Shown here one piece after another: positions 141 to 50,370 of a DNA stretch of 64,000 nt. Origin of the DNA: Macrostomum lignano (Eukaryota); NCBI GenBank assembly GCA_002269645.1, contig NIVC01000975.1, positions 186,001-250,000 on the forward strand, read 5' to 3'. Position 1 is the first letter of the stretch. Every line of letters begins with the position of its first letter. Below the pieces are notes generated by a model that made no database searches, was not told the DNA's origin, and saw only the letters and a program-made list of their open reading frames with translations. The translations under genes and the position numbers were made by a program.

Positions 141-735
141 TGTCCAATCAACAGAACCCCAATCAGCCCCCACTCCAATCAACGCCCAACCCAATCAACC
201 CCCACCCCAATCAACGCCCAACCCAATCAACGCCCACCCCAATCAACGCCCAACCCAATCAACCATCACCCCAATCAACCCCCACCCCAATCAACCATCA
301 CCCCAATCAACCCCCACCCCAATCAACCATCACCCCAATCAACCCCCACCCCAATCAACCATCACCCCAACCAACCCCCACCCCAATCAACCCCCACCCC
401 AATCAACCCCCACCCCAATCAACCCCCACCCCAATCAACCATCACCCCAATCAACCCCCACCCCAATCAACCATCACCCCAACCAACCCCACCCAATCAA
501 CCCCCACCCCAATCAACCCCCACCCAATCAACCCCCACTCAAATCAACGTCCCACTCAAATCAACGCCCAACCCAATCAACGCCCACCCCAATAAACGCC
601 CAACCCAATCAACCATCACCCCAATCAACCCCCACCCCAATCAACCATCACCCCAATCAACCCCCACCCCAATCAACCATCACCCCAACCAACCCCCACC
701 CCAATCAACACCCACCCCAATCAACCCCACCCCAA
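141..735 (+). repeat. C-rich intronic minisatellite, ~16-17 bp unit (CCCCAATCAACCCCCA)
   Basis: Visible tandem units; explains the PNQP-type ORFs at 39-848 and 53-595. Confidence 0.95.
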
Positions 736-740
736 CTCAC

Positions 741-3700
741 TCTGCAGCGCTTTCTCCGCAGCTTCCTGCAATTTCCGCTGCGCCTCCTCTTCGCGTCGTT
801 TCGCCTCGTCCTCCGCATATTCGGCCAGACTATCAACCAGGTAGATGACGCCTTCAGCCTCCAGCTCGTTGCCGTCGAGAAAAAGATCGCTGAATCATTG
901 AGAAAGCTCATGTGATGCCATATTGAGGTGAGGGTTTGGTTGGGGTGTGGGTTTATTGGGATGGGGGTTGATTGGGGTGGGGTTGATTGGGGTGGGGGTT
1001 GATTGGGTGATGGTTGATTGGGGTGGGGTTGATTGTGGTGGGGGTTAATTGGGGTGGGGGTTGATTGGGGTGGGGGTTAATTGGGTTGGGGTTGATTGGG
1101 TTGGGGTTGATTGGGCGGGTGGATTCGGGTGGGTGTTGATGGGGGTGGGTGTTAACTGGGGTGGGGGTTGATTAGGGTGGGGGTTGATTGTGGTGGGGGT
1201 TGATTAAAGTCGGCGTTGATTGGGGTGGGGCGTTGATTTGAGTGGGACGTTGATTTGAGTGGGGGTTGATTGGGGTGGGGTTGATTGGGGTGGGGTTGAT
1301 TGGGGTGGGGGTTGGTTGGGGTGGGCGTTGATTGGGGTGGGGTTGATTGGGGTGGGGTTGATTGGGGTGGGGGTTGATTGGGGTGGGCGTTGATTGGGGT
1401 GGGGTTGATTGGGCGGGTGCATAGGGGGTGGATTGGAGTGTAGTCTAATCGTAGGTCCCTTATAGTAGGTTATTACGAGCGTATTAATAAGTCGCTTATT
1501 ATAGTATAACTCATAGTAGTATAGTGTAAATTGAACATCAACTATGAGAGGATGAGCTACGTGAAAATAGCAACTCACACGACAGCCGATTGGCAGAGCA
1601 GAGTGCCCAGGTACTTTCCGCTGAGATAGGTGAGATCGCAGTAGCACAGGCTGAGAGTTTTCAAGTACTTGTTGCCAATCAGCCCGCGGCAGAGCTCCTT
1701 GCAGCCATCGTCTGAAAACCTGCATGTCAGGGTTTTGAAACACAGCGGTGCTTTGCGTTCAGTTTTTCTGAGGTTCGAGCATAGCAAGACTCACTCGTTA
1801 AAGTCCAGCACGATCTCCGTGAGTGTTCTGCAGGCTCTTGTTGAGTCGCCGAATGATTTCAGCGAGTCCGGCTGCAGCAGGCAGTCCATCAGCTCCACCT
1901 TGGTCAGGGCGTAGAAGCCTTTGCCTATGAGGCTGGACTGCAGGTTGGGGGTGGGGAATCTCTGTGTGTCTGTCTGTGTGTCTGTCTGTGTGTCTGTCTG
2001 TCTGTCTGTCTGTCTGCCTGCCTGTCTGTCTGTCTGTCTGTCAGCAGCGATCACTCACAATGGAGTTGAGCTCTATCAGGTCCAGGCACATGTCCCACAC
2101 GTACAGCGCGGAAATCCCGGTGTACCGCTTGGCCCTGAGCGCCTCCATCAGCGGCCGCACCCGCGCCAGAGGCCTCGGCTCGGCGGGCGGCGGCTCCCTC
2201 TTGACGAACCTGTCAATCAAAACCTGGCCGCTCGCCGGTTCGCCCTTTTTCTGAGCTCGCTTGCGCGACTGGCTGCGAGAGCGGGAGCGGCCGGAGCCCG
2301 CTGAGGCCGGCTTCTTCTTCTCTGGCGTCTTCTGCATCTCAGGCGGCCCGAACATCGCAATGAGATCCTCGTCTGCCCACCGAGTGAACTCGCTGCGGTC
2401 TCGGGGGCACACGATGAACTGGGGATGGGCGAGGGGTTTCAGCATTATTTGGAATGGCTTGCTTGGCACTTCTGGGGGACTCTGACTCCTTCATCTCACT
2501 GACTCCTTCAACTCACTGACTCTCTCATCTCTCTGACTCCTTCATCTCACTGACTCTCTCATCTCTCTGACTCCTTCATCTCACTGACTCTCTCATCTCT
2601 CTGACTCCTTCATCTCACTGACTCTCTCATCTCTCTGACTCCTTCATCTCACTGACTCCTTCATCTCACTGACTCCTTCATCTCACTGACTCCCTAATCT
2701 CACTGACTCTCTCGTCTCTCTGACTCTCTCATCTCTCTGATTCTCTAATCTCACAGACTGTCTCATCTTTATGACTCTCATCTCTCTCACTCTCTCATCT
2801 CTATAACTCTCTCATCTCTCTGACTCTCTCATCTCTCTGACTCCTTCATCTCTCTGATTCATCGTTCTGACTCTCTCATCACACTGACTGTCTCATCTAT
2901 CTGACTCCCTAACCTCACTGACTCTCACTCTCTCCTCTCTCGGACTCCCTAATCTCTATGACTCTTATCTCTATGAGTCTCTCATCTCTCTGACTCTTAT
3001 CTCTTTGGATCTCTCATCTTTCTGACTCTCTCATTTCTCTGACTCTCTCATCTCTTTGACCCTATCATGTCTTTGATCCTCTGGTATTAATTTTTTTTCC
3101 AATTTCCGACTCACCTTGGACATGAGCTTCTCCTGCTCGATGGCTTCACGCATAGCCAATCGGACACTGGGGCAGACTCCGCTCACCAGTTCCGAGCATT
3201 TCGACTCGTACTCAGCAAGGATTTGCTTCATCAGCTTCACTGGATCCACTGCCAGGCTCTGGGTGGTTAGAAAGAAGCATAATAAGGAAAAAATATCCAC
3301 TTTTCCATTCATTTCCATTAGTTTGCAGACATATTTTGCTACAGTAATTTCAGATGCAATTTTTAAATTAAACTTCATAATCCACTGTGTAAAAAAATTG
3401 AATACTATTTGCAAGCAAATGATTTAGACTTTGTGCAAATAAAAATTCAGATTATGAATTATGAATTCTAAAATACTAGAAAAAATGATGAAAAATTTTG
3501 TTTTTTCTTTTTATTACTCTGCTCTAAATATTTCAATAATTTATTGTTGTCTGTGAAAATTTAAATTTATTAGAATTTGAGCAAACATTCAAACACAAAA
3601 ATTGTAGTAATTAACTTTATAAATCTGCATATCAAGATATGTCATAAAGCTGGTCAAAGCAAAACACTTACATCTGATGCTCCTTTCTTTTTTCCTCCCT

Positions 3701-3743
3701 TTCCGCCTTTTCCCCTGCCTTTTTTATTGGCCCCAACCGGCAT
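741..3743 (-). CDS. Leucine-rich-repeat (ribonuclease-inhibitor-like) protein; multi-exon gene, 3' end probably continues left of 741
   Basis: Exons with GT-AG borders and compatible phases: 3743-3672 (MPVGANKKGRGKGG...), 3258-3115, ~2457-2059, 1937-1795, 1719-1579, 889-741. The joined translation contains RNI-type LRRs (LTEIVLDFNEFSDDGCKELCRGL, LKTLSLCYCDLT, DLFLDGNELEAEG). The acceptor near 2457 is approximate. Confidence 0.8.
925..1440 (-). repeat. G-rich inverted copy of the 141-735 minisatellite
   Basis: Units GGGGTGGGGGTTGATT are the reverse complement of the left array. A variant block (ACTCAAATCAACGTCCC) is present in both arrays. Confidence 0.9.
1962..2042. repeat. (TGTC)n/(TG)n microsatellite in LRR-gene intron
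   Basis: Direct reading. Confidence 0.95.
2480..3050. repeat. CT-rich degenerate minisatellite (CTCTCTCATCTCTCTGACT-like)
   Basis: Direct reading; lies between LRR-gene exons. Confidence 0.9.
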
Positions 3744-4441
3744 TTTTAACGTAAAAACAGTACAACCTGCTGAATCATAGAAAAATTAACAATATTCTAG
3801 ACAAGCTTTCAGAGACCGAATTATATACGTTTCTTCTACCGGTATTTACATAGCTAATACTAATAGATAGATATTTATGCGAAGGTGTGTAGTAAAATTG
3901 AAATATTGTTTTACAAATTCGAAATTGATTCTGCAAATGACGCTTGCTAGTAACAACAAACTCGATTTCTGAAACGTTTCTTTCATTTTAAAATAAAAAA
4001 CTCGCAAAAAACTTATTCTAGATTTTAGTTCTTTTACTGCATTTTTATTTTAGTGAATTAAAAACATTTTGTTTATATGAGTAAAAAGTTTGCGAAGTAA
4101 AAAACTAGCGCCGATTTAGTTTCATTCTTTAGAAACTTTTCTTGGCTACAAACGAGCGTGGACAGTCAGCGATTAAACTCTAGCATCAAATTTAAAGCAA
4201 TTTCTGTAAGTTGGTCATATGTTTGCGTCCATATATTTTATTTAAATAATAATTCTGTAATTTTGTATTTTTAAGCAAGTATTGAATAAGCAATTTTTCC
4301 CGCTGCATGATGAAACAGTAAAGAAGTCCGTAATATTAAAACTTTCTATTTTTATTGAACAGAAGTTTTTTAATAACAATAATTTAAATAACTTTACTAA
4401 TTTATTATTTAACACTTGTTAGACTCTCCCACAGCTGACTC

Positions 4442-17055
<12,614 letters not shown>

Positions 17056-17109
17056 CTTATTGGCAGGTGAACGAGCTCGAATTCAAACAGTACAGGTGTC
17101 CGAGTTGGG

Positions 17110-18075
17110 AAATCTAGACCCGAGTCCCAATATCTAAATCCGGAGTCCCAATATCTAAATCCCGAGTCCCAACATCTAGATCCCAAGTCCCAATATCTAG
17201 ATCCTGAGTCCCAATATCTAGATCCCGAGTCCCAAACATCAAGATCCCGAGTTCCAATACCTAGATCCCGAGTCCCTATATCTAGATCCCGAGTCCCAAT
17301 ATCTAGATCCCGAGTCCCAACATCTAGATCCCGAGTCCCAACATCTAGATTCGCGAGTACCAATATCTAGATCCCGAGTCCCAATACCTAGATCCCGAGT
17401 CCCAATACCTAGATCCCGAGTCCCAATATCTAGATCCCGAGTCCCAATATCTAGATCCCGAGTCCCAAAATCTAGATCCCGAGTCCCAATATCTAGATCC
17501 CGAGTCCCAAAATCTAGATCCTGAGTCCCAATATCTAGATCCCGAGTCCCAACATCTACATCCCAAGTCCCAACATCTAGATACCGAGTCCCAATACCTA
17601 GATCCCGAGTCCCAATATCTAGATCCCGAGTCCCAACATCTAGATTCCCGAGTCCCAATATCTAGATTCCCAAGTCCCAATATCTAGGATCCCGAGTCCC
17701 AACATCTAGATCCCGAGTCCCAACATCTAGATCCCGAGTCCCAACATCTAGATTCTCGAGTCCCAAACATCTAGATTCGCGAGTACCAACATCTAGATCC
17801 CGAGTCCCAAACATCAAGATCCCGAGTTCCAATACCTAGATCCCGAGTCCCTATATCTAGATCCCGAGTCCCAATATCTAGATCCCGAGTCCCAACATCT
17901 AGATCCCGAGTCCCAACATCTAGATTCGCGAGTACCAATATCTAGATCCCGAGTCCCAACATCTAGATTCGCGAGTCCCAATATCTAGATCCCGAATCCC
18001 AAATCTAGATCCCGAGTCCCAACATCTAGATTCGCGAGTACGAATATCTAGATCCCGAGTCTCAACATCTAGATG
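17110..18075. repeat. 21-bp minisatellite (TCTAGATCCCGAGTCCCAATA) just 3' of the filamin stop
   Basis: Direct reading. Confidence 0.95.
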
Positions 18076-18924
18076 CCGAATTCGCAAGTAATATTTATAA
18101 CGTATAGACTGTGAAGTTTGTATGCCGGCTACCACGGTCAACTCGTATTGCCATTCCAGCATCCTACAGTAAGTCGTTGACTCGTTTAGCTATTTTCATC
18201 AGCCACAAGAACTTTTTTAATTTCTACTAACAAGTAAAGTAAAACACGAATGAAAAATATTATTATAGTATTTACTCATAGCGGGGTTTTCTCTATGTTC
18301 CCGCAAATTTTTGTATCTGTAAGGTCGCACAGCAAACCCATTTAATGTACATTTCAAAGATAATTATTTTTAACGATTTGAAAAAATTAACGTTGATTCT
18401 CAGCCACATTTAACTGCTATTAACCATTTTTTCAAACGATATTTAGCAACCTTCACTAAACTGTTTTGCCGTGAAATTTTGGCCTAATAATCAAAAAGTT
18501 TTTTTTGAAAGCAAAATACCTTTCATTAACTTTCTCACCTTCAAAGGGAAGTGATTAATTAGTATAATGCATATATAGCTCTCTTCCCAGATTGAAACCT
18601 TACTTATCTGCTAGTGAGGACAATTAGTTTGTGCTATTGATAATTAAAATATATGCGACTCACAACCATTTTATTAAGTCACGAATGAACCTCTGGTTTT
18701 TTAGCTAAACGTATAAATCCACTGTTTTAATTTTCTCTGCCAGACACAGAGGTAACATTTCCATTTCCATGTTCAGCTATATTAAATACACTAACGGACA
18801 TTAGAAAGTATCCAACCTGATCTAGTGAACCATTTCTTTCTGATCACAAATACAAGTTACGCATCAGGCATCCCGCGCGGGGAACGGTATTATTCAATTG
18901 CACTACGAGCTCCGTATTGCATGA

Positions 18925-21115: not shown

Positions 21116-21337
21116 GGGCTGCGGTTTGCGCTAGGCTTGCCTTGAGCAAACCGGCTTTAGTGCCCAAGCGCGCTGCGTCTGTGGTGCGCCCCCCCGCCGC
21201 GTGTGTACGTTCTGTGTTGTTTACAGTTTGGCTGCCGCCGGCGGGGGGGGGTATTTTACTCCAGCCGCGCTGCTGAGTTGGCAGTGTTTTCGCGCAGTTC
21301 TTTTTTTGCACTGAACTCTAATGCCAATCGCTGAATC

Positions 21338-22378
21338 ATGGCTAGCACTGACACTGTCAAGTCACTGCGCGAGAGGTTGCAATGCCTAGGCCTGCCAACC
21401 CACGGAAACAAAATGGAGCTATTGGAGAGGCTGTCTGCACACATCGACAGCGTTACAGAACTGCAGGACGGCGATGTTCGCAGACCTTCACTGACCCCGG
21501 AGACGACTCGCTCGAAGAACATTCAAGATTTTCTGGCGGCTGCGGCGGACGGCGAAGCTGCGACGGCGGCGTCAGAGTCTGGAGCGGCTGGCGGCCTGGA
21601 CGACGAGGTGCGGGACGTCGAGCAGCGTATACGGCTGCTGAAACTGTGCAAGGAAGAAGCCGAGCTGCAGGCCGAGGTTAACCTATTGCAGCGGCACCGG
21701 GCTCCCTCAACTAACCATGGTGAGTTGTTTGGTCACGTGATATCAGGGAGTGAGTCAGCTAGACCAGCGATCCCGCATGGTACCTACCGCATCCCCGAAT
21801 TCATCTGTAAACGCAAGCAGCAGGAAGCGGGTATCATCCAGTCTGTTGATCGGACAGGTAAAGTTGTCTACAAAGTGAAGGAGGCAGCGTTAGAATCTCT
21901 GACCTTTGGCGACTGGATTGCTGGCAATGCGCGCATAATGCTGAAGATGCTGGATGATGGAGCTCTAGTTAAGAGCGGTGAAGGAGAATGTCCTGATGTT
22001 TCTGAGCTCCGAGACTACCTGCGCTTTAATATTCGGATAGGAGAGCTTTTTGACCTTGGTTTCGAGAAGACCCGCGTCATGAGATTCGACGATGAGTGCA
22101 GAATAAGCCAGACAGCTACTACCTCTTGGGAAGCCAGAGCCACCGACATGGGTCTGGTGGCCGCCTACCTGATGGCACCACAGAGGGGTCCGACTGCCTC
22201 AGAGAGACTATCGAAGCGGAGCCAGCAGCCTGTGTGCTTTGACTTCAATAAGGAAGCCGGTTGCAGCAGAAGAAACTGCAAGTTTGCTCATCAATGCCGG
22301 AGGTGCGGTCTAGGCCACTCAGAAGCGGCTGCCCACCGGGATGGCGTGGGTATCGAGACGGCCAGGCCGTCGCACTGA
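21338..22378 (+). CDS. Gag-like ORF1 of the YR element (N-terminal SAP-like domain, coiled coil, C-terminal CCCH-type zinc finger)
   Basis: 346 aa from a true ATG. LRERLQCLGLPTHGNKMELLERL is SAP-like; CFDFNKEAGCSRRNCKFAHQCRRCGLGH is a Cys/His finger. Confidence 0.85.
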   Translation: MASTDTVKSLRERLQCLGLPTHGNKMELLERLSAHIDSVTELQDGDVRRPSLTPETTRSKNIQDFLAAAADGEAATAASESGAAGGLDDEVRDVEQRIRLLKLCKEEAELQAEVNLLQRHRAPSTNHGELFGHVISGSESARPAIPHGTYRIPEFICKRKQQEAGIIQSVDRTGKVVYKVKEAALESLTFGDWIAGNARIMLKMLDDGALVKSGEGECPDVSELRDYLRFNIRIGELFDLGFEKTRVMRFDDECRISQTATTSWEARATDMGLVAAYLMAPQRGPTASERLSKRSQQPVCFDFNKEAGCSRRNCKFAHQCRRCGLGHSEAAAHRDGVGIETARPSH

Positions 22379-24082
22379 CTAAGTGCCCGTAGTGATTTTA
22401 ACGTCCCCGTTTTATCTACAGATTTGAGGTTCGTGGAGTGGGAGAAGGAGCTGTTGTGTATTGATTTGCCTATGGATCGGAAGAAGTTTATTCTCGATGG
22501 TGTTGCATATGGTTTTCGTATAACTAACAAAACTGTTTCTGACTGCAAGCCAATTGGTGTTAACAACTACCATTTTGTCAATGTTCATTTCGAGGCTGTG
22601 GAAAAGCAGATTAAGAAGGAGCTCGGGTGTGGCAGGTATCGCGAGTGCCCGACCGGCTGGCGTCCGCAAGTGGTCAGTGCTCTCGGAGCCTTGCCCAAGG
22701 TTGGTGGCCGTGTGCGCCTGATTCACGACTGCAGTCGGCCCGTGAATAACTCTGTGAACTCCAGATGGGTCAGCCAGGAGAGGCTGCGCTTCACGTGTGC
22801 CGACAACTTTGCGAGGAAGCTTTCTAGAGGCTGCTTTATGACTAAGGTGGATCTCAGCGAAGCGTACCGCGCCTGTGGTGTTCACCCCGATGATTTCAGC
22901 CGGACAGGGATCAAGTTCCGCTTCGGCGAGTCCAAGGCAGCCACCTACATGTATGACACCCGTTTGCCGTTCGGCGCTGCAGCTTCTGTTACCTGTTTTC
23001 ACCATCTTAGCAATGCTGTGCGTTTAATGATGGTGCGCAGAGGCTTTGTGGGCACCGAGTCCTACCTGGACGATTTCGCCTTCGCGGGCTCGCGTGACGA
23101 ATGCCAGCGGTTTTACGACGAGCTGACAGGCCTGTTGACGCGGCTGGGCTTCACTGTAAACTGGGCAAAGTGTCAGACACCAACTCAGCGCATGACCTTC
23201 CTTGGTGTCGAGTTCGATACAGTGGCCGGCATCAAGAGGTTGCCCGAGGAGAAGGCGAGGAACCTCGCTGAGTTGTTAGCAACTGAAAGGAGCAAAACCA
23301 GGATCCGCAAGCGGGCTTTGCAACGCTTGATCGGCAAGCTTGGCTGGGCAGCACAGGTGATTCGCAAAGGAAAAACTTTTCTGCGTGATCTGATCGAAGT
23401 GTGCAACGCTATGCGGCCTGACGAGAGAATTAAAGTCAGCTTACAGCTCTGTGACCAATTCTGCTGGTGGATTGTAGCGCTGGAGTCGGCCCGGTGGGTG
23501 GAGCTCTGGCCTGTTCTCAAGAACCATGTGGCAATCGAGTCCGATGCATGTGGCAGAGGCGGGGCAGCGGTGCTTCGAAGGTCAGATGGCAGTTGGGACT
23601 GGTGCTACATCAATTGGAGCCAGGATGGGGCCGGAGTGTTCGCTGATCTGCCAATCAACTACAAAGAGGCAGTGGCTCCTTTGCTGTCAATCCTGCGCTG
23701 GAGGGAAGAGCTGAAAGGCTGTAACGTTAGCGTTTATTGTGACAACATGGCGGCCTGTCATATTATCAATAATGGCACTTCGAGGTGTCCTGTCGTGCAG
23801 AGGCTACTGCAAACGATTGCGTTGATGTCTTTACGGCATGGTCTGAGTGTGCGAGCCTTTCATGTGCCGGGAGAGTTTCAAATTCTCGCCGATGCAGCGT
23901 CTCGGTTGCACGAGCGCAGTCAGTTGATTAATTTTTTATTTCGCTGCTATGGCAACTTGTGCCCGTTTGCTTTGCAATCAATGCATCGACATGCTTTCTG
24001 CCCTGCCTCTGCCCACTTTCCTCATTTTCAGGCCGTCCAGCTGCGCCAGACTCTCTCAGCCGCCGGGCCGCGTCGCTGCTAG
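22379..24082 (+). CDS. Reverse transcriptase / RNase H of the YR element (open from directly after the gag stop; no early ATG)
   Basis: Motifs GFRI, VRLIHDCS, KVDLSEAYR, RLPFG, YLDD, FLG; RNase H SDACG, NYKEA, VYCDN, ADAASR. Confidence 0.92.
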   Translation, partial: LSARSDFNVPVLSTDLRFVEWEKELLCIDLPMDRKKFILDGVAYGFRITNKTVSDCKPIGVNNYHFVNVHFEAVEKQIKKELGCGRYRECPTGWRPQVVSALGALPKVGGRVRLIHDCSRPVNNSVNSRWVSQERLRFTCADNFARKLSRGCFMTKVDLSEAYRACGVHPDDFSRTGIKFRFGESKAATYMYDTRLPFGAAASVTCFHHLSNAVRLMMVRRGFVGTESYLDDFAFAGSRDECQRFYDELTGLLTRLGFTVNWAKCQTPTQRMTFLGVEFDTVAGIKRLPEEKARNLAELLATERSKTRIRKRALQRLIGKLGWAAQVIRKGKTFLRDLIEVCNAMRPDERIKVSLQLCDQFCWWIVALESARWVELWPVLKNHVAIESDACGRGGAAVLRRSDGSWDWCYINWSQDGAGVFADLPINYKEAVAPLLSILRWREELKGCNVSVYCDNMAACHIINNGTSRCPVVQRLLQTIALMSLRHGLSVRAFHVPGEFQILADAASRLHERSQLINFLFRCYGNLCPFALQSMHRHAFCPASAHFPHFQAVQLRQTLSAAGPRRC

Positions 24083-25017
24083 GCGTCTCTTATGCACCAC
24101 GGTCAAGGCAGGCGGTGGCAAGGCACATCCGTGAGTGGCTAGCTTACTGCAAGCAGACCCGCTGCAGTCCTGTATCCTGTCCGCTGAACAGCCTGCTCGA
24201 CTACCTGGCCAGCCTAGTCGGGACGCGTTTGCGTGCGTACGGCAGCGTTGCTTCTGTCGCCAGCTTGCTGTCCGTTTGGTTTCGCGTCAACTCTGCACCA
24301 GACCTGACGAAGCATGCCGCCACGACTCTCCTCCTGCGAGGCGCCAAGCGAGAGCTGGGACTTCGGGTGTCGAGAAAACGACCAGTATCGCCGCTCATGT
24401 TGTCGGAGATTCATCAGCGAGTCAGTCGTTCTGACGGGCTTCAGCTGGCATGCTGGGCAGTCGCCATCTGCTGTTGGTGGGGCATGCTCCGAAAATCCAG
24501 CGTGCTGCCGACTTCGGGAAAAGGTCCGGCACGTGTGCGCTGCGCTGACATCTTTCGACACCCGCGAGGTCTGATCTTGCGCCTGGAGCAAGGGAAGACT
24601 CTCCAGTTCAAAGAGCGGGTGCACCAGGTGCTTCTACCAAGGCTAGTGAGGCGGACGTCGCTGTGCCCGGTGTTAGCAATCGAGCAGCACGCAAGATTCA
24701 ATAATCTGCAATCGGCTGATGCGCCTCTGTTCACTTATCGCGACGCCGGAGGCAACCAGAGGCTGCTGACAGGCAGGCAGCTCGATCGCTTCCTAGCGGA
24801 CAAGCTAGGGGCTGCGGGCTTCAGGCGTGAGCACTTCTCAGCCCACAGCCTCCGCCGTGGCGGCGCGACCTGGGCCTCGGTGTTGGGTGTGCCGGTGCCC
24901 GACATCATGCGGATCGGTGACTGGAAGAGCGACTCAGTGCAGCGGTATCTCCCGCAGTCGCAGCAGGGCTTGGCAGCTTCCGTCGTGTTTGCTAGAGGTG
25001 TTGGATCCCTCGTTTGA
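23932..25017 (+). CDS. Tyrosine recombinase of the YR element (frame open from 23932; no ATG before the conserved region)
   Basis: SAM-like N-terminal region, then GMLRKS, GKT, HSLRRGGATW and IG.WKSD...RY catalytic motifs. Confidence 0.92.
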   Translation, partial: FFISLLWQLVPVCFAINASTCFLPCLCPLSSFSGRPAAPDSLSRRAASLLGVSYAPRSRQAVARHIREWLAYCKQTRCSPVSCPLNSLLDYLASLVGTRLRAYGSVASVASLLSVWFRVNSAPDLTKHAATTLLLRGAKRELGLRVSRKRPVSPLMLSEIHQRVSRSDGLQLACWAVAICCWWGMLRKSSVLPTSGKGPARVRCADIFRHPRGLILRLEQGKTLQFKERVHQVLLPRLVRRTSLCPVLAIEQHARFNNLQSADAPLFTYRDAGGNQRLLTGRQLDRFLADKLGAAGFRREHFSAHSLRRGGATWASVLGVPVPDIMRIGDWKSDSVQRYLPQSQQGLAASVVFARGVGSLV

Positions 25018-25777
25018 CGTTGGCATCAGCTTTTCGATGTTCCGTTTCCTTCAATTTTTTTCTTTCGCGCGCTTTCCCGTTGTTGTTTCGGCTTTGGAGG
25101 CCTCGTTACTGCTTTCGCTTTCGCCAACATCGCGTATTCGTGTTTTGCTTTGGGGCACTAAGGCTGCGGTTTGCGCTAGGCTTGCCTTGAGCAAACCGGC
25201 TTTAGTGCCCAAGCGCGCTGCGTCTGTGGTGCGCCCCCCCCGCCGCGTGTGTACGTTCTGTGTTGTTTAGGTGGGCGCCCACCCCTCCGCCGGCGGGGGG
25301 GGGGTATTTTACTCCAGCCGCGCTGCTGAGTTGGCAGTGTTTTCGCGCAGTTTTTTTTTCCTCTTCTTTTATCCTTATTCTTTTAATCAATAAAATATAA
25401 ATAAAGAGGCCTCGTTACTGCTTTCGCTTTCGCCAACATCGCGTATTCGTGTTTTGCTTTGGGGCACTAAGGCTGCGGTTTGCGCTAGGCTTGCCTTGAG
25501 CAAACCGGCTTTAGTGCCCAAGCGCGCTGCGTCTGTGGTGCGCCCCCCCCGCCGCGTGTGTACGTTCTGTGTTGTTTAGGTGGGCGCCCACCCCTCCGCC
25601 GGCGGGGGGGGGTATTTTACTCCAGCCGCGCTGCTGAGTTGGCAGTGTTTTCGCGCAGTTTTTTTTCCTCTTCTTTTATCCTTATTCTTTTAATCAATAA
25701 AATATAAATAAAGAGGCCTCGTTACTGCTTTCGCTTTCGCCAACATCGCGTATTCGTGTTTTGCTTTGGGGCACTAA

Positions 25778-26330
25778 ACTGCGCTATCCTGTATGATTTG
25801 ACGAAGGACGTTGTCTGGACTTGGACGCCAGAACACCAGAGTGCAGTGAAGCAACTGAAGCAGGACATCATATCGAGACACTTGCTGACTCCGTATGATC
25901 CAACTGAAGAGCTGTTCCTGACCACTGATGAGTCGTCCTAACGGCATTGGAGGAGAGTTGAAACAAAAGTGCCACTCGGAGAAAAGCAGATCCAAGATGG
26001 TTTCAGTCGATTGCGATCATGCAAAGATGTGCCAGAGTCGTATCGACAACTTCAGAGTAGACTGAGCTGCACTGAGAATCTCCTGCTACTGGATCACCGG
26101 AGTCTTTCCTGCTAAGCTGCAAGCATTGGTCACAGGCCGGAGAACAATCGTGGGTCTGATGATGCTTCGTGACATTATCAGACAGAGCACAGCGAGCGAC
26201 GGACAATCATCTCGAAGACAACGAGCAAATCAAACCCTTAAGAGCGACAGCACTGAGCACAGATATCCAGTGCGGACAATAGGACTGGTATTGATTGCTT
26301 TGTACCGGTTTTGAATACATCCAGGGGTAG
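25778..26330 (+). mobile_element. Decayed Ty3/Gypsy pol remnant, right part
   Basis: NCAILYDLTKDVVWTWTPEHQSAVKQLKQDII..LLTPYDPTEELFLTTDES matches the RT-RNaseH connection of Gypsy pol; later RYPVR-like C-terminus. Confidence 0.7.
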
Positions 26331-27078: not shown

Positions 27079-31942
<4,864 letters not shown>

Positions 31943-46970: not shown

Positions 46971-47544
46971 AAGTTTCTAAGGATCCAACTTCCAAGGGAC
47001 ACAAGGAGAGGCAGAGGCCATGAGTTTGCCTGACATTCTGTGCAGCACCCCAACCAACAATATTAATGTTTGCTTCAAATACTAATTGTACATGAATGTA
47101 CTCTATTTTATGTTTAACTCTATCCTAAATTCCTAACTATTAAAAAGTTTTTGTTTAAGTATGGGCTCAGATTTCAGAATACATGCAAAAATAGTTCCGG
47201 GGATTGGAATTCCCCGGGTTCAAATTCCGCGGGTTTCAACAGCTTGTATATATATATATTATGTATGTATTATATAAATATATATATAGATATAGCATAA
47301 AGCTTTAGGATGAAATGTGGAGACTGAAAATGTTTTGTGAGAAGATTCTCTTTGATGATAAAGATAGTCGGTTGTTCAGATTGGAGACAAAAAATTCAAG
47401 CATTCAATTTGCTTTAGCACTCGTATTTGCATATAGTCAGACCCCAGATACCTCGGAGGCGATTGCTAACAAGGCTCAATATTGGCAGCTATGAGAGTGG
47501 CTAGGGACCTGCAGGCAGTTGAGTACGAATGACAAAGGTGAAGA

Positions 47545-49540
47545 GCCCTCCAGATCAAGAGCCCTCCGAGATCGAGAGCCTTCCCAGATGGAGAGCCCTC
47601 TCATATCAAGAGCCTTCCCAGATCAAGAGCCCTCCCAGATCAAGAGCCCTCCCAGATCAAGAGCCCTCCCAGATCGAGAGCCCTCCCAGATCAAGAGCCC
47701 TCCGAGATCGAGAGCCTTCCCAGATGGAGAGCCCTCTCATATCAAGAGCCCTCCGAGATCGAGAGCCCTCCCAGATCAAGAGCCCTCCCAGATCAAGAGC
47801 CCTCCCAGATCGAGAGCCCTCCCAGATCGAGAGCCCTCCCAAATAGAGAGCCCTCCCAGACAGAGAGCCTTCCCAGATCAAGAGCCCTCCCAGATAGAGA
47901 GCCCTCTAAGATCGAGAGCCCTCCCAGATAGAGAGCCCTCTAAGATCGAGAGCCCTCCCAGATAGAGAGCCCTCCCAGATAGAGAGCCCTCTAAGATCGA
48001 GAGCCCTCCCAGATAGAGAGCCCTCTAAGATCGAGAGCCCTCCCAGACAGAGAGCCTTCCCAGATCAAGAGCCCTCCCAGATAGAGAGCCCTCCCAGATC
48101 AAGAGCCTTCCCAGATCGAGAGCCCTCCCAAATAGAGAGCCCTCCCAGACAGAGAGCCCTCCCAGATCGAGAGCCCTCCCAAATAGAGAGCCCTCCCAGA
48201 CAGAGAGCCTTCCCAGATCAAGAGCCCTCCCAGATCAAGAGCCCTCCCAGATCAAGAGCCCTCCCAGATCGAGAGCCCTCCCAGATCAAGAGCCCTCCGA
48301 GATCGAGAGCCTTCCCAGATGGAGAGCCCTCTCATATCAAGAGCCCTCCGAGATCGAGAGCCCTCCCAGATCAAGAGCCCTCCCAGATCAAGAGCCCTCC
48401 CAGATCGAGAGCCCTCCCAGATCGAGAGCCCTCCCAAATAGAGAGCCCTCCCAGACAGAGAGCCTTCCCAGATCAAGAGCCCTCCCAGATAGAGAGCCCT
48501 CTAAGATCGAGAGCCCTCCCAGATAGAGAGCCCTCTAAGATCGAGAGCCCTCCCAGATAGAGAGCCCTCTAAGATCGAGAGCCCTCCCAGACAGAGAGCC
48601 TTCCCAGATCAAGAGCCCTCCCAGATAGAGAGCCCTCTAAGATCAAGAGCCCTCCCAGATCGAGAGCCCTCCCAGATCAAGAGCCTTCCCAGATCGAGAG
48701 CCCTCCCAAATAGAGAGCCCTCCCAGACAGAGAGCCCTCCCAGATCGAGAGCCCTCCCAAATAGAGAGCCCTCCCAGACAGAGAGCCTTCCCAGATCAAG
48801 AGCCCTCCCAGATAGAGAGCCCTCTAAGATCGAGAGCCCTCCCAGATCGAGAGCCCTCCCAAATAGAGAGCCCTCCCAGACAGAGAGCCTTCCCAGATCA
48901 AGAGCCCTCCCAGATAGAGAGCCCTCTAAGATCGAGAGCCCTCCCAGATAGAGAGCCCTCTAAGATCGAGAGCCCTCCCAGATAGAGAGCCCTCTAAGAT
49001 CGAGAGCCCTCCCAGACAGAGAGCCTTCCCAGATCAAGAGCCCTCCCAGATAGAGAGCCCTCTAAGATCGAGAGCCCTCCCAGATCAAGAGCCCTCTAAG
49101 ATCGAGAGCCCTCCCAGATAGAGAGCCCTCTAAGATCGAGAGCCCTCCCAGACAGAGAGCCTTCCCAGATCAAGAGCCCTCCCAGATAGAGAGCCCTCTA
49201 AGATCGAGAGCCCTCCCAGATCAAGAGCCTTCCAAGATCAAGAGCCTTCCCAGATCGATAGCCCTCCCAAATAGAGAGCCCTCCCAGACAGAGAGCCTTC
49301 CCAGATCAAGAGCCCTCCCAGATAGAGAGCCCTCTAAGATCGAGAGCCCTCCCAGATAGAGAGCCCTCTAAGATCGAGAGCCCTCCCAGATAGAGAGCCC
49401 TCTAAGATCGAGAGCCCTCCCAGATAGAGAGCCCTCTAAGATCGAGAGCCCTCCCAGATCAAGAGCCTTCCAAGATCGAGAGCCTTCCCGGTTCCCAGAT
49501 CGAGAGCCTTTTCCAGATCAAGAGCCCTCTCAGATCGAGG
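47545..49540. repeat. 2 kb 17-bp minisatellite (GAGAGCCCTCCCAGATC) with higher-order duplicated blocks
   Basis: Direct reading; identical 74-aa antisense ORFs at 47657 and 48252 show a 595-bp internal duplication. Confidence 0.95.
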
Positions 49541-50039
49541 GCATTCTCAATTTTAGTTGACTCAATTAATGTAGTGCCAGACATTTGGAGACTAATAAAA
49601 CGTCGATATATAGCTGATATGCTCTCGATTTAATTATGAAATTTCTAGGACCCAAATTTAGTTAACTACACAACGGTTTCTAGAAAAATAATCAAGTCGT
49701 TTTTTTATTGAGTTTATATTTATATTGTTTTACATTATAAACAGATTTACAATTTGCGAGCATGCATACGTACAATCACAGAATCAAATTAATGTGGAGG
49801 CATTTGTCTGCTTAGTACAACAGTGCTACCTAGTGCTAGTTTAGCAAGGAAAGATTTTTATTCGTATTGCTTTTGATCTGAATTTGGCAGCAGAATTAAT
49901 TAAATACTCGTAGTTAAAGAAACATTACCAAACTTGAACAAAAAAAATTAACAAAATCTTTTTGCTTGGCTGTTTAGCTGGAATTATGTAGCATGTCACT
50001 CCCGGTGGTACGTTTTACTACGTGGGATGTCATCTAGAT

Positions 50040-50370
50040 AAAATGTCACTCTAGGTGAAATGTCACTCTAGGTGAAATGTCCCTCTAGGCGAAGTGTCAC
50101 TTTAGGTGAAATGTCACTCTAGGTGAAATGTCACTCTAGGTGAAATGTCCCTCTAGGCGAAGTGTCACTCTAGGTGAAATGTCACTCTAGGTGAAATGTC
50201 ACTCTAGGTGAAATGTCACTCTAGGTGAAATGTACCTCTAGGCGAAGTGTCACTCTAGGTGAAATGTCACTCTAGGTGAAATGTCACTCTAGGTGAAATG
50301 TCCCTCTAGGCGAAGTGTCACTCTAGGTGCGATGTCACTCCAGATGGGATGTCACTCTAGGTGAAATGTC
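50040..50370. repeat. 17-bp minisatellite (AAATGTCACTCTAGGTG)
   Basis: Direct reading. Confidence 0.92.

What the first reader, a model, noticed from the sequence alone, without database searches (positions are those of the whole stretch)
21338..25017. YR retrotransposon with a one-donor, two-acceptor splicing design that would put the same SAP plus coiled-coil Gag leader on RT/RNaseH or on the recombinase
Seen: a consensus donor CATG|GTGAGT at 21719/21720 lies right after the gag coiled coil, in phase 1. A strong acceptor (TTTTAAC...CCCCGTTTTATCTACAG|, ending 22421) lies just before the RT domain, in phase 1. A second strong acceptor (~35-nt pyrimidine tract ...CACTTTCCTCATTTTCAG|, ending 24031) lies just before the conserved YR start, also in phase 1. 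Neither downstream ORF has an ATG ahead of its conserved region. Splicing gives in-frame products of 680 aa (Gag127-RT-RH) and 455 aa (Gag127-YR), while unspliced RNA gives the 346-aa Gag. A second phase-1 donor (CAG|GTAAAG, 21857/21858) is also available. Inference: alternative splicing sets stoichiometry, and the shared leader recruits both enzymes into Gag particles or onto DNA, in a retrovirus-like strategy that I do not recall being described for Ngaro/DIRS elements.
Basis: partly seen in the sequence, partly recalled or inferred. Interest (0 to 1): 0.85.

Follow-up and report, generated by a model that had tools for sequence, protein, structure and literature searches.

The report
Ngaro retrotransposon: readthrough plus one splice
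This is an intact Ngaro-type mobile element whose reverse transcriptase is most likely made by reading through a leaky stop codon, while its recombinase is most likely made from a spliced RNA that joins the first 127 codons of Gag to the recombinase. That second route differs from the frameshift the field has assumed.

Summary
In my ranking, the donor at 21719|20 is the best GT in the element, and the two acceptors are its best two AGs.

**Gag to RT splice: not supported.**
- gag and RT/RH are in the same frame, separated by one UGA followed by CUA.
- The 15 codons after the stop are conserved as protein in relatives.
- The AG of "acceptor 1" is missing in all four relatives that cover that site.
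- Three relatives with RT in the -1 frame carry A_AAA_AAY just before the gag stop. Gag-RT/RH is therefore made by recoding.

**Gag to YR splice (21719^24032): supported by comparison.**
- A pyrimidine tract plus YAG sits exactly at the start of YR conservation in 13 of 13 loci, and it is the top acceptor of the element or contig in 9.
- A phase-1 GT[GA]AG-type donor lies in gag in all 11 loci that hold both genes.
- Three RefSeq models (limpet and two amphioxus) join a Gag leader to YR at the homologous sites.
- No conserved slippery heptamer exists at the RT/YR overlap, where the -1 frameshift has been assumed.

No RNA reads could be examined, so the splice remains an inference.

The parts
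21117..25777 (+). Whole Ngaro-type YR retrotransposon. All three ORFs are uninterrupted, with no internal stops or frameshifts apart from the gag UGA.
   Evidence: Repeats. ORFs. Pfam domains.
21117..21305 (+). A1 copy of the split direct repeat (5' end)
   Evidence: About 92% identical to A2 (25162-25359) and A3 (25471-25666).
21338..22378 (+). gag ORF, 346 aa. It has an N-terminal SAP domain, a long helix, and a C-terminal Cys/His-rich zinc-finger-like motif (by eye).
21353..21445 (+). SAP domain (Gag residues 6-36)
   Evidence: Pfam PF02037, E = 6.9e-07, above the curated cut-off.
21596..21694 (+). It ends 8 residues before the donor.
   Evidence: Single-sequence AF2 model. The helix has pLDDT about 67-76, but the rest of the model is low confidence. 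Oligomerisation was not tested.
21717..21725 (+). 5' splice site ATG|GTGAGT. The border is 21719|21720, in phase 1 after Gag codon 127.
   Evidence: Best of 232 GT in the element. Conserved in phase 1 in L001, L002, L003 and L011.
21720..24031 (+). Proposed 2312-nt intron. It holds the rest of gag and all of RT/RH, and is removed to make the leader-YR mRNA.
   Evidence: Inferred from the conserved donor, acceptor and phase and from RefSeq models of relatives.
22376..22381 (+). gag stop UGA followed by CUA, the proposed readthrough site giving Gag-RT/RH
   Evidence: A single in-frame stop. UGA followed by C is found in 7 of 7 same-frame loci. The post-stop codons are conserved as protein.
22379..24082 (+). 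RT/RH reading frame, open from the codon after the gag UGA. Stop at 24080-24082.
   Evidence: RVT_1 E = 3.1e-11. RT_RNaseH E = 1e-3, which is below the curated cut-off. 51-60% identity to P0001-P0003.
23996..24031 (+). Pyrimidine tract plus CAG, the 3' splice site for the YR exon. The border is 24031|24032, in phase 1 of the YR frame.
   Evidence: Best of 275 AG. The 30 nt before it are 83% pyrimidine against a 50% background. The homologous site is present in 13 of 13 loci.
24031..25017 (+). YR (tyrosine recombinase) coding region from the acceptor codon to the stop at 25015-25017. By eye it contains the LR.S, H-x-x-R and Y motifs typical of the family.
   Evidence: Phage_integrase E = 1e-3, below the curated cut-off. 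HMMER found 4647 relatives, the best at 56-60% identity.
25097..25777 (+). 3' repeats B1-A2-spacer-B2-A3-spacer-B3. This is 2.2 copies of a 309-nt unit, one unit more than the canonical B1-A2-B2.
22380..22421 (+). It is real as a motif but lies in conserved coding sequence, and its AG is specific to the window.
   Evidence: The AG is replaced by TG, GG, TG and CG in L001, L002, L003 and L011.
21855..21863 (+). Not conserved.
   Evidence: No GT at the homologous codons of L001, L002 or L003.
23932..23938 (+). T_TTT_TTA heptamer in the RT frame, the only candidate -1 slip site in the RT/YR overlap (rival explanation)
   Evidence: It arises from the conserved N-F-L codons. It is imperfect or absent in L002 and L003. 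The YR frame is closed between it and the acceptor in L003. There is no downstream structure, z = +1.44.

Best explanation
The region 21117-25777 is an intact Ngaro-type tyrosine-recombinase retrotransposon with the layout gag, RT/RNase H, YR and split direct repeats.

I propose three products from one primary transcript.

1. **Gag (346 aa).** Made from unspliced RNA by termination at UGA 22376.
2. **Gag-RT/RH fusion.** Made from the same RNA when ribosomes occasionally read through that UGA. The context is UGA-CUA, the RT frame is the same frame as gag, and it is open from the very next codon.
3. **Leader-YR fusion (455 aa).** Made from a spliced subgenomic mRNA. The intron 21720-24031 is removed, so Gag codons 1-127 (SAP domain plus long helix) are joined in frame to YR.

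**What is shown directly:**
- the frames, motifs and phases;
- conservation or non-conservation of each signal in relatives;
- the existence of public gene models with the same exon structure.

**What is inferred:**
- that readthrough and splicing actually occur;
- that splicing efficiency and readthrough efficiency set the Gag : Gag-RT : leader-YR ratios;
- that the shared N-terminal leader brings YR to Gag assemblies or to DNA.

Separate likelihoods: Ngaro identity about 0.95, readthrough for RT/RH about 0.8, splicing for YR about 0.7.
For: **Identity.** SAP, RVT_1, RT_RNaseH and Phage_integrase domains are present with no methyltransferase. Repeats are A1 then B1-A2-B2-A3-B3.

**Readthrough.**
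- gag and RT share a frame across a single TGA.
- The same layout, with UGA followed by C, occurs in L001, L002, L011, L006, L007 and L017, so in 7 of 7 same-frame loci.
- The post-stop codons are conserved as L-x-x-x-x-[DNG]-F-N-...-[VI]-L-S-[ST]-D-L, with third-position changes.
- Where RT is in the -1 frame instead (L003, L012, L016), a canonical A_AAA_AAC or A_AAA_AAT heptamer lies in the gag frame inside the overlap.
- UGA CUA(G) is a documented leaky context (bioRxiv 10.1101/2021.04.18.440353).

**Splice to YR.**
- The acceptor is the top-scoring AG in the window, L001, L002, L003, L004, L006, L012, L015 and L017. It ranks 3rd to 5th in L007, L013, L016 and L018.
- It is always in phase 1, and it sits at the point where conservation switches from the RT frame to the YR frame.
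- The 30 nt before it are 63-83% pyrimidine against a background of about 50%.
- The best donor inside gag is in phase 1 in 10 of 11 loci. The eleventh, L003, has the homologous T|GTGAGT in phase 1.
- The border codon is NGT in 10 of 10 loci, across different amino acids (G, C, S) and different gag types.
- RefSeq models XP_050388701.2 (Patella vulgata), XP_078682739.1 (Branchiostoma hybrid) and XP_035659582.1 (B. floridae) join a gag leader to YR across one intron that contains the rest of gag plus RT/RH. Each uses a phase-1 donor and a phase-1 acceptor.
- GT[G/A]AG and CAG are the cis-splice motifs of Macrostomum lignano, the nearest named host of relatives (PMC8629364).

**Against the alternative for YR.** There is no perfect X_XXY_YYZ heptamer in the RT/YR overlap of the 8 loci scanned other than the window and L001. 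The YR frame is closed 7-14 codons before the acceptor in six loci. YR is in the +1 frame in L013.
Against: - No RNA evidence of any kind was reachable. The contigs I retrieved are unspliced.
- The XP_ models are computational predictions, and I could not check their transcript support.
- The relatives are partly non-independent. Five loci belong to one family.
- The splice-site matrices are my own approximations and serve only for ranking.
- The pyrimidine tract also encodes a conserved RT-frame tail (H-[AM]-x...F-L-x-x-Q), so part of its conservation could be protein constraint.
- No stimulatory RNA structure was found after the UGA. Readthrough would have to rely on the immediate context alone.
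- The window does carry a T_TTT_TTA heptamer in the RT/YR overlap, so a -1 frameshift cannot be excluded for this particular copy.
- The host species is unknown.
Confidence: 0.6

Rival explanations
1. One donor (21719) is spliced alternatively to two acceptors (22421 and 24031). That gives Gag127-RT/RH and Gag127-YR, and the RT product needs no recoding.
For: Both acceptors are the two best AGs of the window element, and both are in phase 1. TTTTAAC lies upstream of acceptor 1 as a possible branch site.
Against: The AG of acceptor 1 is absent at the homologous site in all four relatives that cover it. The codons it would remove are conserved as protein, with synonymous variation. gag and RT are in frame across a single UGA-C in 7 loci, and show -1 with A_AAA_AAY in 3 loci.
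Confidence: 0.07
2. YR is made by a -1 programmed ribosomal frameshift from the RT/RH frame in the overlap, giving a (Gag-)RT/RH-YR polyprotein. This is what Poulter and Butler (2015) proposed for Ngaro elements. No splicing is involved, and the splice-like motifs are by-products of coding.
For: YR overlaps the RT/RH end in the -1 frame in 12 of 13 loci. The window has T_TTT_TTA at 23932-23938 in the RT frame, with the YR frame open from exactly that point. L001 has T_TTT_TTG at the homologous place. The frameshift proposal is quoted in PMC13003380.
Against: The heptamer comes from conserved N-F-L codons. It is imperfect in L002 and absent in L003. The YR frame is closed by a stop 7-14 codons before the acceptor in L003, L006, L007, L012, L013 and L015. 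No perfect heptamer exists in those short windows. L013 has YR in the +1 frame. No structure follows the window heptamer, z = +1.44. In the same elements, true -1 sites at gag/RT do carry canonical heptamers. This model does not explain the conserved phase-1 donors in gag.
Confidence: 0.15
3. The YR acceptor is a spliced-leader trans-splice site, assuming the host is a flatworm. The element RNA would be processed like an operon, and YR would be translated from an SL-capped mRNA.
For: The nearest named relatives are from Macrostomum lignano. [quoted passage not shown] The window's TTTCAG matches it (PMC8629364).
Against: The SL given in that paper ends in ATG. Joined at 24032, that ATG would be in the RT-frame tail, which stops after 16 codons, and not in the YR frame. 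The next YR-frame ATG is 366 nt downstream, inside the conserved region. A strong cis donor lies upstream and is conserved. The same architecture occurs in limpet and amphioxus models that are cis-spliced. The host has not been established as a flatworm.
Confidence: 0.05
4. The splice-like signals are not used. YR is translated by some other route, such as internal or non-AUG initiation or a separate internal promoter. Or this family makes YR so rarely that no dedicated mechanism exists.
For: There is no RNA evidence either way. L007 has an in-frame ATG 6 codons before the acceptor. Many ORF-called YR proteins in the databases start near the acceptor.
Against: Most loci have no ATG near the YR start. 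The top-ranking donor and acceptor, with matched phase, are conserved across phyla, which is hard to explain without use.
Confidence: 0.08

Closest known systems
Ngaro retrotransposons (DIRS order; Goodwin and Poulter 2004, as summarised in PMC8547959, PMC4157794 and PMC7192593)
   Same: gag-like ORF1, RT/RH ORF2 and YR ORF3. No methyltransferase. Split direct repeats A1-[ORFs]-B1A2B2. The YR ORF overlaps the RT/RH end in the -1 frame.
   Different: One extra 309-nt B-A unit at the 3' end. Gag carries an N-terminal SAP domain. The review literature I could reach attributes YR expression to a -1 frameshift (quoted in PMC13003380). The signals here point to splicing instead.
Gammaretrovirus-type Gag-Pol synthesis by in-frame stop-codon readthrough, and UGA-C / UGA-CUA leaky contexts of alphaviruses and cellular genes (my knowledge; context data in bioRxiv 10.1101/2021.04.18.440353)
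   Same: A single in-frame stop between gag and the polymerase ORF. The frame is open immediately after the stop. The context is UGA followed by C or CUA. The expected result is a minority Gag-enzyme fusion.
   Different: No downstream pseudoknot or stem-loop was detected. The stop is UGA rather than the UAG of murine leukaemia virus. The fusion carries RT/RH only, with no protease or integrase.
Retroviral subgenomic env mRNA, especially avian leukosis/sarcoma viruses where the splice donor lies inside gag so Env starts with a few Gag codons (my knowledge)
   Same: One 5' splice site near the start of the genome, inside gag. One 3' splice site just before a downstream ORF that lacks its own start codon. 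An in-frame fusion to the Gag N-terminus. The unspliced RNA serves as both genome and gag(-pol) mRNA.
   Different: The leader is long (124-312 codons in the gene models, 127 here) and includes a folded domain. The downstream gene is the recombinase, not an envelope protein. The element is not an LTR element or a retrovirus.
-1 frameshift sites A_AAA_AAC / A_AAA_AAU of retroviruses and LTR retrotransposons (my knowledge)
   Same: Relatives L003, L012 and L016 have exactly this heptamer in the gag frame within the gag/RT overlap. In L003 and L012 it lies within five codons of the gag stop. L003 has a possible hairpin starting 7 nt after it.
   Different: The window element does not use it at gag/RT, where the two genes share a frame. 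It also has no conserved equivalent at RT/YR.
Spliced LTR retrotransposons (copia gag mRNA, Ogre intron; my knowledge)
   Same: Host spliceosomal splicing is used to set the ratios of element proteins.
   Different: Those splices remove or separate pol to enrich Gag or to restore an ORF. Here the splice would skip gag-C and RT/RH to express the integration enzyme as a fusion protein.

Membership tests
Ngaro (YR retrotransposon, DIRS order) | Encodes RT/RNase H and a tyrosine recombinase on the same strand | tested here: met
   RVT_1 E = 3.1e-11 (above cut-off). RT_RNaseH and Phage_integrase E = 1e-3 (below the curated cut-offs). Supported by 51-60% identity to RT and YR relatives.
Ngaro (YR retrotransposon, DIRS order) | No methyltransferase domain (this distinguishes Ngaro from DIRS1-like and PAT-like elements) | tested here: met
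   No such Pfam hit. The RH region ends about 100 nt before the YR start, leaving no room for one.
Ngaro (YR retrotransposon, DIRS order) | Split direct repeats A1-[ORFs]-B1-A2-B2 | tested here: met
   A1 at 21117-21305. B1-A2-B2-A3-B3 at 25097-25777, which is the canonical pattern plus one extra unit.
Ngaro (YR retrotransposon, DIRS order) | gag-like ORF1 upstream of RT/RH | tested here: met
   A 346-aa ORF with a SAP domain and a C-terminal Cys/His motif. It is homologous to the ORF1 of relatives.
Ngaro (YR retrotransposon, DIRS order) | RT and YR group with reference Ngaro sequences in a phylogeny | not tested
   No named reference Ngaro sequences were available from the tools. The relatives found are unnamed contigs and uncharacterised gene models.
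Gag-polymerase fusion by stop-codon readthrough | gag and the polymerase ORF share a frame and are separated by exactly one stop | tested here: met
   TGA at 22376-22378, with the frame open from 22379. Six relatives have the same layout.
Gag-polymerase fusion by stop-codon readthrough | Leaky stop context | tested here: met
   UGA CUA in the window. UGA followed by C in 7 of 7 same-frame loci. The context is documented as leaky in the literature.
Gag-polymerase fusion by stop-codon readthrough | Codons immediately 3' of the stop evolve as coding sequence | tested here: met
   A conserved peptide with third-position differences in the window, L001, L002 and L011.
Gag-polymerase fusion by stop-codon readthrough | Downstream stimulatory RNA structure, as in gammaretroviruses | tested here: not met
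   The 120 nt after the stop fold no better than shuffled sequence in the window family, z = +0.1 to +2.4.
Gag-polymerase fusion by stop-codon readthrough | The readthrough protein is observed | not testable with these tools
   No proteomic or ribosome-profiling data are available here.
Retrovirus-like spliced subgenomic mRNA (leader-YR) | Consensus 5' splice site in the gag leader, conserved in relatives | tested here: met
   G|GTGAGT is ranked 1st of 232. The homologous phase-1 GTGAG is present in L001, L002, L003 and L011. The best gag donor is in phase 1 in 10 of 11 loci.
Retrovirus-like spliced subgenomic mRNA (leader-YR) | Consensus 3' splice site immediately before the downstream ORF's conserved region, conserved in relatives | tested here: met
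   Pyrimidine tract plus YAG in 13 of 13 loci. It is the top-ranked AG in 9 of them.
Retrovirus-like spliced subgenomic mRNA (leader-YR) | Donor and acceptor phases match, so the fusion is in frame | tested here: met
   Phase 1 with phase 1 in all 11 loci that hold both genes. This includes loci whose gag, RT and YR frame relations differ.
Retrovirus-like spliced subgenomic mRNA (leader-YR) | The spliced RNA is observed | not testable with these tools
   Only computational RefSeq models with this exon structure were found. No reads were available.
-1 programmed frameshift for YR (proposal of Poulter and Butler 2015, quoted in PMC13003380) | YR ORF overlaps the end of RT/RH in the -1 frame | tested here: met
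   -1 in the window and in 11 other loci, +1 in L013.
-1 programmed frameshift for YR (proposal of Poulter and Butler 2015, quoted in PMC13003380) | A slippery X_XXY_YYZ heptamer in the overlap, conserved among relatives | tested here: not met
   Perfect heptamers occur only in the window (T_TTT_TTA) and L001. None is found in the other 8 loci scanned (L002, L003, L004, L006, L007, L012, L013, L015). The YR frame is closed 7-14 codons before the acceptor in six loci.
-1 programmed frameshift for YR (proposal of Poulter and Butler 2015, quoted in PMC13003380) | Stimulatory structure 5-9 nt after the heptamer | tested here: not met
   Window 23939-24040 gives z = +1.44.
   No AG at the homologous position in L001, L002, L003 or L011.

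The most novel reading that the evidence does not exclude
Across bilaterian Ngaro-like elements, the tyrosine recombinase is not made by frameshifting. It is made from a spliced subgenomic mRNA as an in-frame fusion to the N-terminal module of Gag, while RT/RH is made as a Gag fusion by readthrough or -1 frameshifting. Elements from a probably flatworm-like host, from a limpet and from amphioxus share this layout. YR retrotransposons would then have a retrovirus-like two-RNA expression programme. The Gag N-terminus would be a shared address tag on both enzymes.
Probability: 0.6. Interest if true: 0.75.

Novelty: new variant of a known kind. Interest (0 to 1): 0.7.

Why it matters
How YR retrotransposons express their recombinase has never been shown. 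The standard review assumes a -1 frameshift.

If the splice is real, three things follow:
- The assumed frameshift would be replaced by a testable mechanism.
- Ngaro elements would show a retrovirus-like division between genomic and subgenomic RNA. To my knowledge this has not been described for the DIRS order, and it was not found in the papers I could search.
- It would explain why YR ORFs in these elements lack start codons.

It also matters for annotation. ORF-based TE pipelines would miss the true YR protein, and gene predictors already emit 'uncharacterised proteins' that are really leader-YR products.

The clade also uses UGA readthrough and A_AAA_AAY frameshifting interchangeably at gag/RT. 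That is a tidy natural example of recoding signals being swapped.

Tried and rejected
- **Other copies in the window.** None found.
- **Metagenome scan with an RT alignment.** It returned only 6 distant or decayed loci.
- **Gag protein search.** It returned only 2 hits.
- **YR word-index search.** It returned only 6 hits. The full HMMER search was needed to find the leader-YR proteins.
- **Contig for P0109** (M. lignano SAP-gag/YR model). Not on record. DNA for P0108 and P0109 could not be examined.
- **MAFFT alignment of gag.** It first misplaced the L002 donor, which made it look like GC instead of GT. PWM scanning showed the true G|GTGAGT 20 nt downstream, at the real G-E-L codons.
- **RNA structure after the gag UGA and after the T_TTT_TTA heptamer.** Nothing better than shuffled sequence.
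- **Hairpin after the L003 A_AAA_AAC.** It is well placed but not significant, z = -1.07.
- **Rfam scan of the whole window.** No hits.
- **M. lignano SL sequence** (taken from PMC8629364). Not in the window.
- **Single-sequence AF2 model of Gag.** Low confidence, mean pLDDT 41. I used it only for the helix at 87-119.
- **Literature.** I found no description of natural splicing in DIRS or Ngaro elements in the papers I could search. The Poulter and Butler review itself is not held.
- **Patella annotation.** The Ensembl annotation was BRAKER2 in protein mode. The model I used is the separate NCBI XP_ record.
- **Tool consensus line.** align_proteins prints a majority-consensus line by design. 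I did not use, save or reproduce it.
- **Check of the three RefSeq models.** I verified exon borders by translating the annotated exons in memory and comparing with the public protein.
- **Decayed relatives.** L004 (RT with three frame changes), L011 (gag with two frame changes) and L007 (two in-frame stops) were used only for the junctions they still cover.

Full report
**1. What is there**

Window 21117-25777 (+) holds one complete YR retrotransposon. No other copy is in the window.

- ORF1 (21338-22378, 346 aa) has an N-terminal SAP domain (Pfam E = 6.9e-07). It also has a long predicted helix at residues 87-119 (low-confidence model) and a C-terminal Cys/His-rich motif.
- ORF3 is open from 23932 to 25017 and is a phage-integrase-type tyrosine recombinase.
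- There is no methyltransferase.
- The ends are split direct repeats. A1 is at 21117-21305. B1-A2-B2-A3-B3 is at 25097-25777, one 309-nt unit more than the canonical Ngaro pattern.
- All three ORFs are uninterrupted.

This is a Ngaro-type element as defined in PMC8547959, PMC4157794 and PMC7192593. It sits inside a decayed LTR-retrotransposon fragment, within a region rich in C2H2 zinc-finger genes and minisatellites.

**2. The observation**

I ranked the sites with approximate generic splice-site matrices of my own. Donor 21719|20 (ATG|GTGAGT) is the best of 232 GT on the sense strand. Acceptor 24031 is the best of 275 AG, acceptor 22421 is second, and donor 21857 is fourth.

**3. Relatives**

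Protein searches and contig look-ups gave these loci:

| Group | Loci | Notes |
|---|---|---|
| Close family | L001, L002, L003, L004, L011 | 51-60% RT identity; SAP-type gag where gag is covered; from JGI sample 3300040801 and Logan SRR31628392 |
| More distant | L012, L006, L007, L013/L014, L015 | 34-39% RT identity |
| Chromosomal | L016 (Patella vulgata), L017 (Branchiostoma hybrid), L018 (B. floridae) | carry RefSeq gene models |

The nearest named proteins are gene models of the flatworm Macrostomum lignano. One of them is annotated as a SAP domain-containing protein. The host of the window itself remains unidentified.

**4. gag to RT/RH is recoding, not splicing**

- *In-frame stop.* L001, L002, L011, L006, L007 and L017 have the window's layout: gag and RT in one frame, a single UGA, and C as the next base. 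That makes 7 of 7 same-frame loci.
- *Coding after the stop.* In the close family the codons after the stop read L-x-x-x-x-[DNG]-F-N-...-[VI]-L-S-[ST]-D-L, with third-position differences. They evolve as coding sequence.
- *Acceptor 1 is not conserved.* The window's AG comes from ACA GAT. The relatives have ACT GAC, TCG GAC, TCT GAC and ACC GAC, so none has the AG.
- *Frameshift sites in relatives.* L003, L012 and L016 have RT in the -1 frame. Each carries A_AAA_AAC or A_AAA_AAT in the gag frame within the overlap, and in L003 and L012 it lies within five codons of the gag stop.
- *Leaky context.* UGA CUA(G), and UGA followed by C, are documented leaky contexts.
- *No structure.* I found no stimulatory structure after the stop, so any readthrough would depend on the local context.
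- *Donor 2 is not conserved*.

**5. gag leader to YR looks like a real splice**

*Acceptor.*
- A pyrimidine tract plus YAG lies at the homologous point in all 13 loci that cover the RT/YR junction.
- It is the top-scoring AG of the element or contig in 9 of them, and 3rd to 5th in the other 4.
- The 30 nt before it are 63-83% pyrimidine against a background of about 50%.
- It is always in phase 1 of the YR frame.
- In the close family, the better-conserved frame upstream of it is the RT frame (0.51 against 0.35 amino-acid identity, and L003 has a stop in the YR frame).
- Downstream, the RT frame ends at variable distances, from 11 to 280 nt.

*Donor.*
- The window's G|GTGAGT lies at the codons G-E-L.
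- The same place reads G|GTGAGC in L001, G|GTGAGT in L002 and L011, and T|GTGAGT in L003. All are in phase 1.
- Elements with unrelated gag N-termini also have a strong donor in phase 1. It is the best in gag in L012, L006, L013, L015, L016, L017 and L018, which brings the total to 10 of 11 loci.
- Among all other GT sites scoring 6 or more in those gag ORFs, only about 40% are in phase 1.
- The codon at the border is NGT in 10 of 10 loci, although it encodes Gly, Cys or Ser.

*Phase matching.* The phases match in every locus. This includes loci where gag, RT and YR have different frame relations: RT is in the -1 frame in L003, L012 and L016, RT is in the +1 frame in L015 and L018, and YR is in the +1 frame in L013.

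*Independent gene models.*
- XP_050388701.2, XP_078682739.1 and XP_035659582.1 each consist of a gag leader (124, 173 and 312 codons) joined to YR.
- Each spans a single intron of 2.2-3.1 kb that contains the rest of gag and RT/RH.
- Each uses exactly these phase-1 sites.
- These are computational models, and I could not see their read support.

**6. The standing alternative**

Poulter and Butler (2015), as quoted in PMC13003380, attribute Ngaro YR expression to a -1 frameshift in the overlap.

- *In favour.* The -1 relation holds in 12 of 13 loci. The window has T_TTT_TTA at 23932-23938 with the YR frame open from there.
- *Against.* That heptamer comes from conserved N-F-L codons. It is imperfect in L002 and absent in L003.
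- *Against.* Six loci close the YR frame 7-14 codons before the acceptor and have no heptamer in between. L013 is in the +1 frame.
- *Against.* No structure follows the window heptamer.
- *Internal control.* The same elements do show canonical heptamers where they really need a -1 shift, at gag/RT.

*SL trans-splicing (possible in a flatworm host).* The acceptor fits the M. lignano trans-acceptor motif. However, the SL's terminal ATG would be out of frame with YR. The architecture also recurs in limpet and amphioxus.

**7. Mechanism proposed**

One primary transcript would give three products:
- Gag, by termination at the UGA.
- Gag-RT/RH, by occasional readthrough of the UGA.
- After removal of 21720-24031, a 455-aa protein consisting of Gag 1-127 (SAP plus helix) fused to YR.

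The signals, their conservation and their phases are shown directly. That the events occur, that they set the stoichiometry, and that the shared leader takes YR to Gag assemblies or to DNA are all inferred.

**8. Novelty and limits**

I found no paper describing natural splicing of a DIRS or Ngaro element. I rate this a new variant of a known kind, namely retrovirus-style subgenomic splicing plus recoding in a YR retrotransposon.

The main limits are:
- no RNA data;
- partly related loci, so the evidence is not fully independent;
- home-made scoring matrices;
- an unknown host.

Noticed in passing
window 25097-25777: The 3' repeat block has one extra 309-nt unit, giving B1-A2-spacer-B2-A3-spacer-B3 instead of B1-A2-B2. 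Each spacer carries AATAAA motifs just before the next B copy.
   Followed up: partly
window 25756-25938 (+) and flanks of 21117/25777: The Ngaro element is embedded in a decayed LTR-retrotransposon fragment. An RT_RNaseH_2 remnant starts right after the last B repeat (Pfam E = 1.2e-07).
   Followed up: partly
window 27640-31623 (+): An uninterrupted 1327-aa ORF with RVT_1, RT_RNaseH, Integrase_H2C2 and rve domains. It is a Ty3/gypsy-type pol that looks intact.
   Followed up: partly
window about 19.7-20.3, 27.0-27.4, 31.8-32.9, 35.8-37.1, 38.8-40.0 and 42.6-44.2 kb (-): A cluster of tandem C2H2 zinc-finger genes on the minus strand, visible as 84-nt periodicity. Pfam found up to 11 fingers per ORF in the two ORFs that were scanned.
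   Followed up: partly
window 150-18100 and 47500-57700: Many long minisatellite arrays with periods of 16-44 nt and up to 58 copies, plus a 226-copy ATCT microsatellite at 5906-6807.
   Followed up: no
window 8298-9284 (+): A 328-aa ORF with a calponin-homology (CH) domain (Pfam E = 7e-14). It is possibly an exon-rich host gene fragment.
   Followed up: no
L003 1050-1056, L012 1068-1074, L016 7002-7008: Relatives with RT in the -1 frame carry A_AAA_AAC or A_AAA_AAT in the gag frame within the overlap. In L003 and L012 it lies within five codons of the gag stop. Same-frame relatives use UGA-C instead, so the recoding signals have been swapped within one clade.
   Followed up: yes
L015 1012-1187; L018 4487-4626: Two relatives have RT in the +1 frame relative to gag, with overlaps of 140-176 nt and no recognisable recoding signal. 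How RT is made there is unexplained.
   Followed up: no
P0108 and P0109 (UniRef, Macrostomum lignano): Flatworm gene models join gag, RT and YR pieces. P0109 enters YR exactly at the homolog of acceptor 24031. P0108 passes from the RT frame into the YR frame a few codons after it. Their DNA could not be retrieved.
   Followed up: partly
RT-frame tail before the YR acceptor in all loci (window 23989-24031): A motif H-[AM]-x...F-L-x-x-Q is conserved in the RT frame from the window's family to the limpet element. It is unclear whether this reflects protein constraint or simply the branch site and pyrimidine tract read in that frame.
   Followed up: partly
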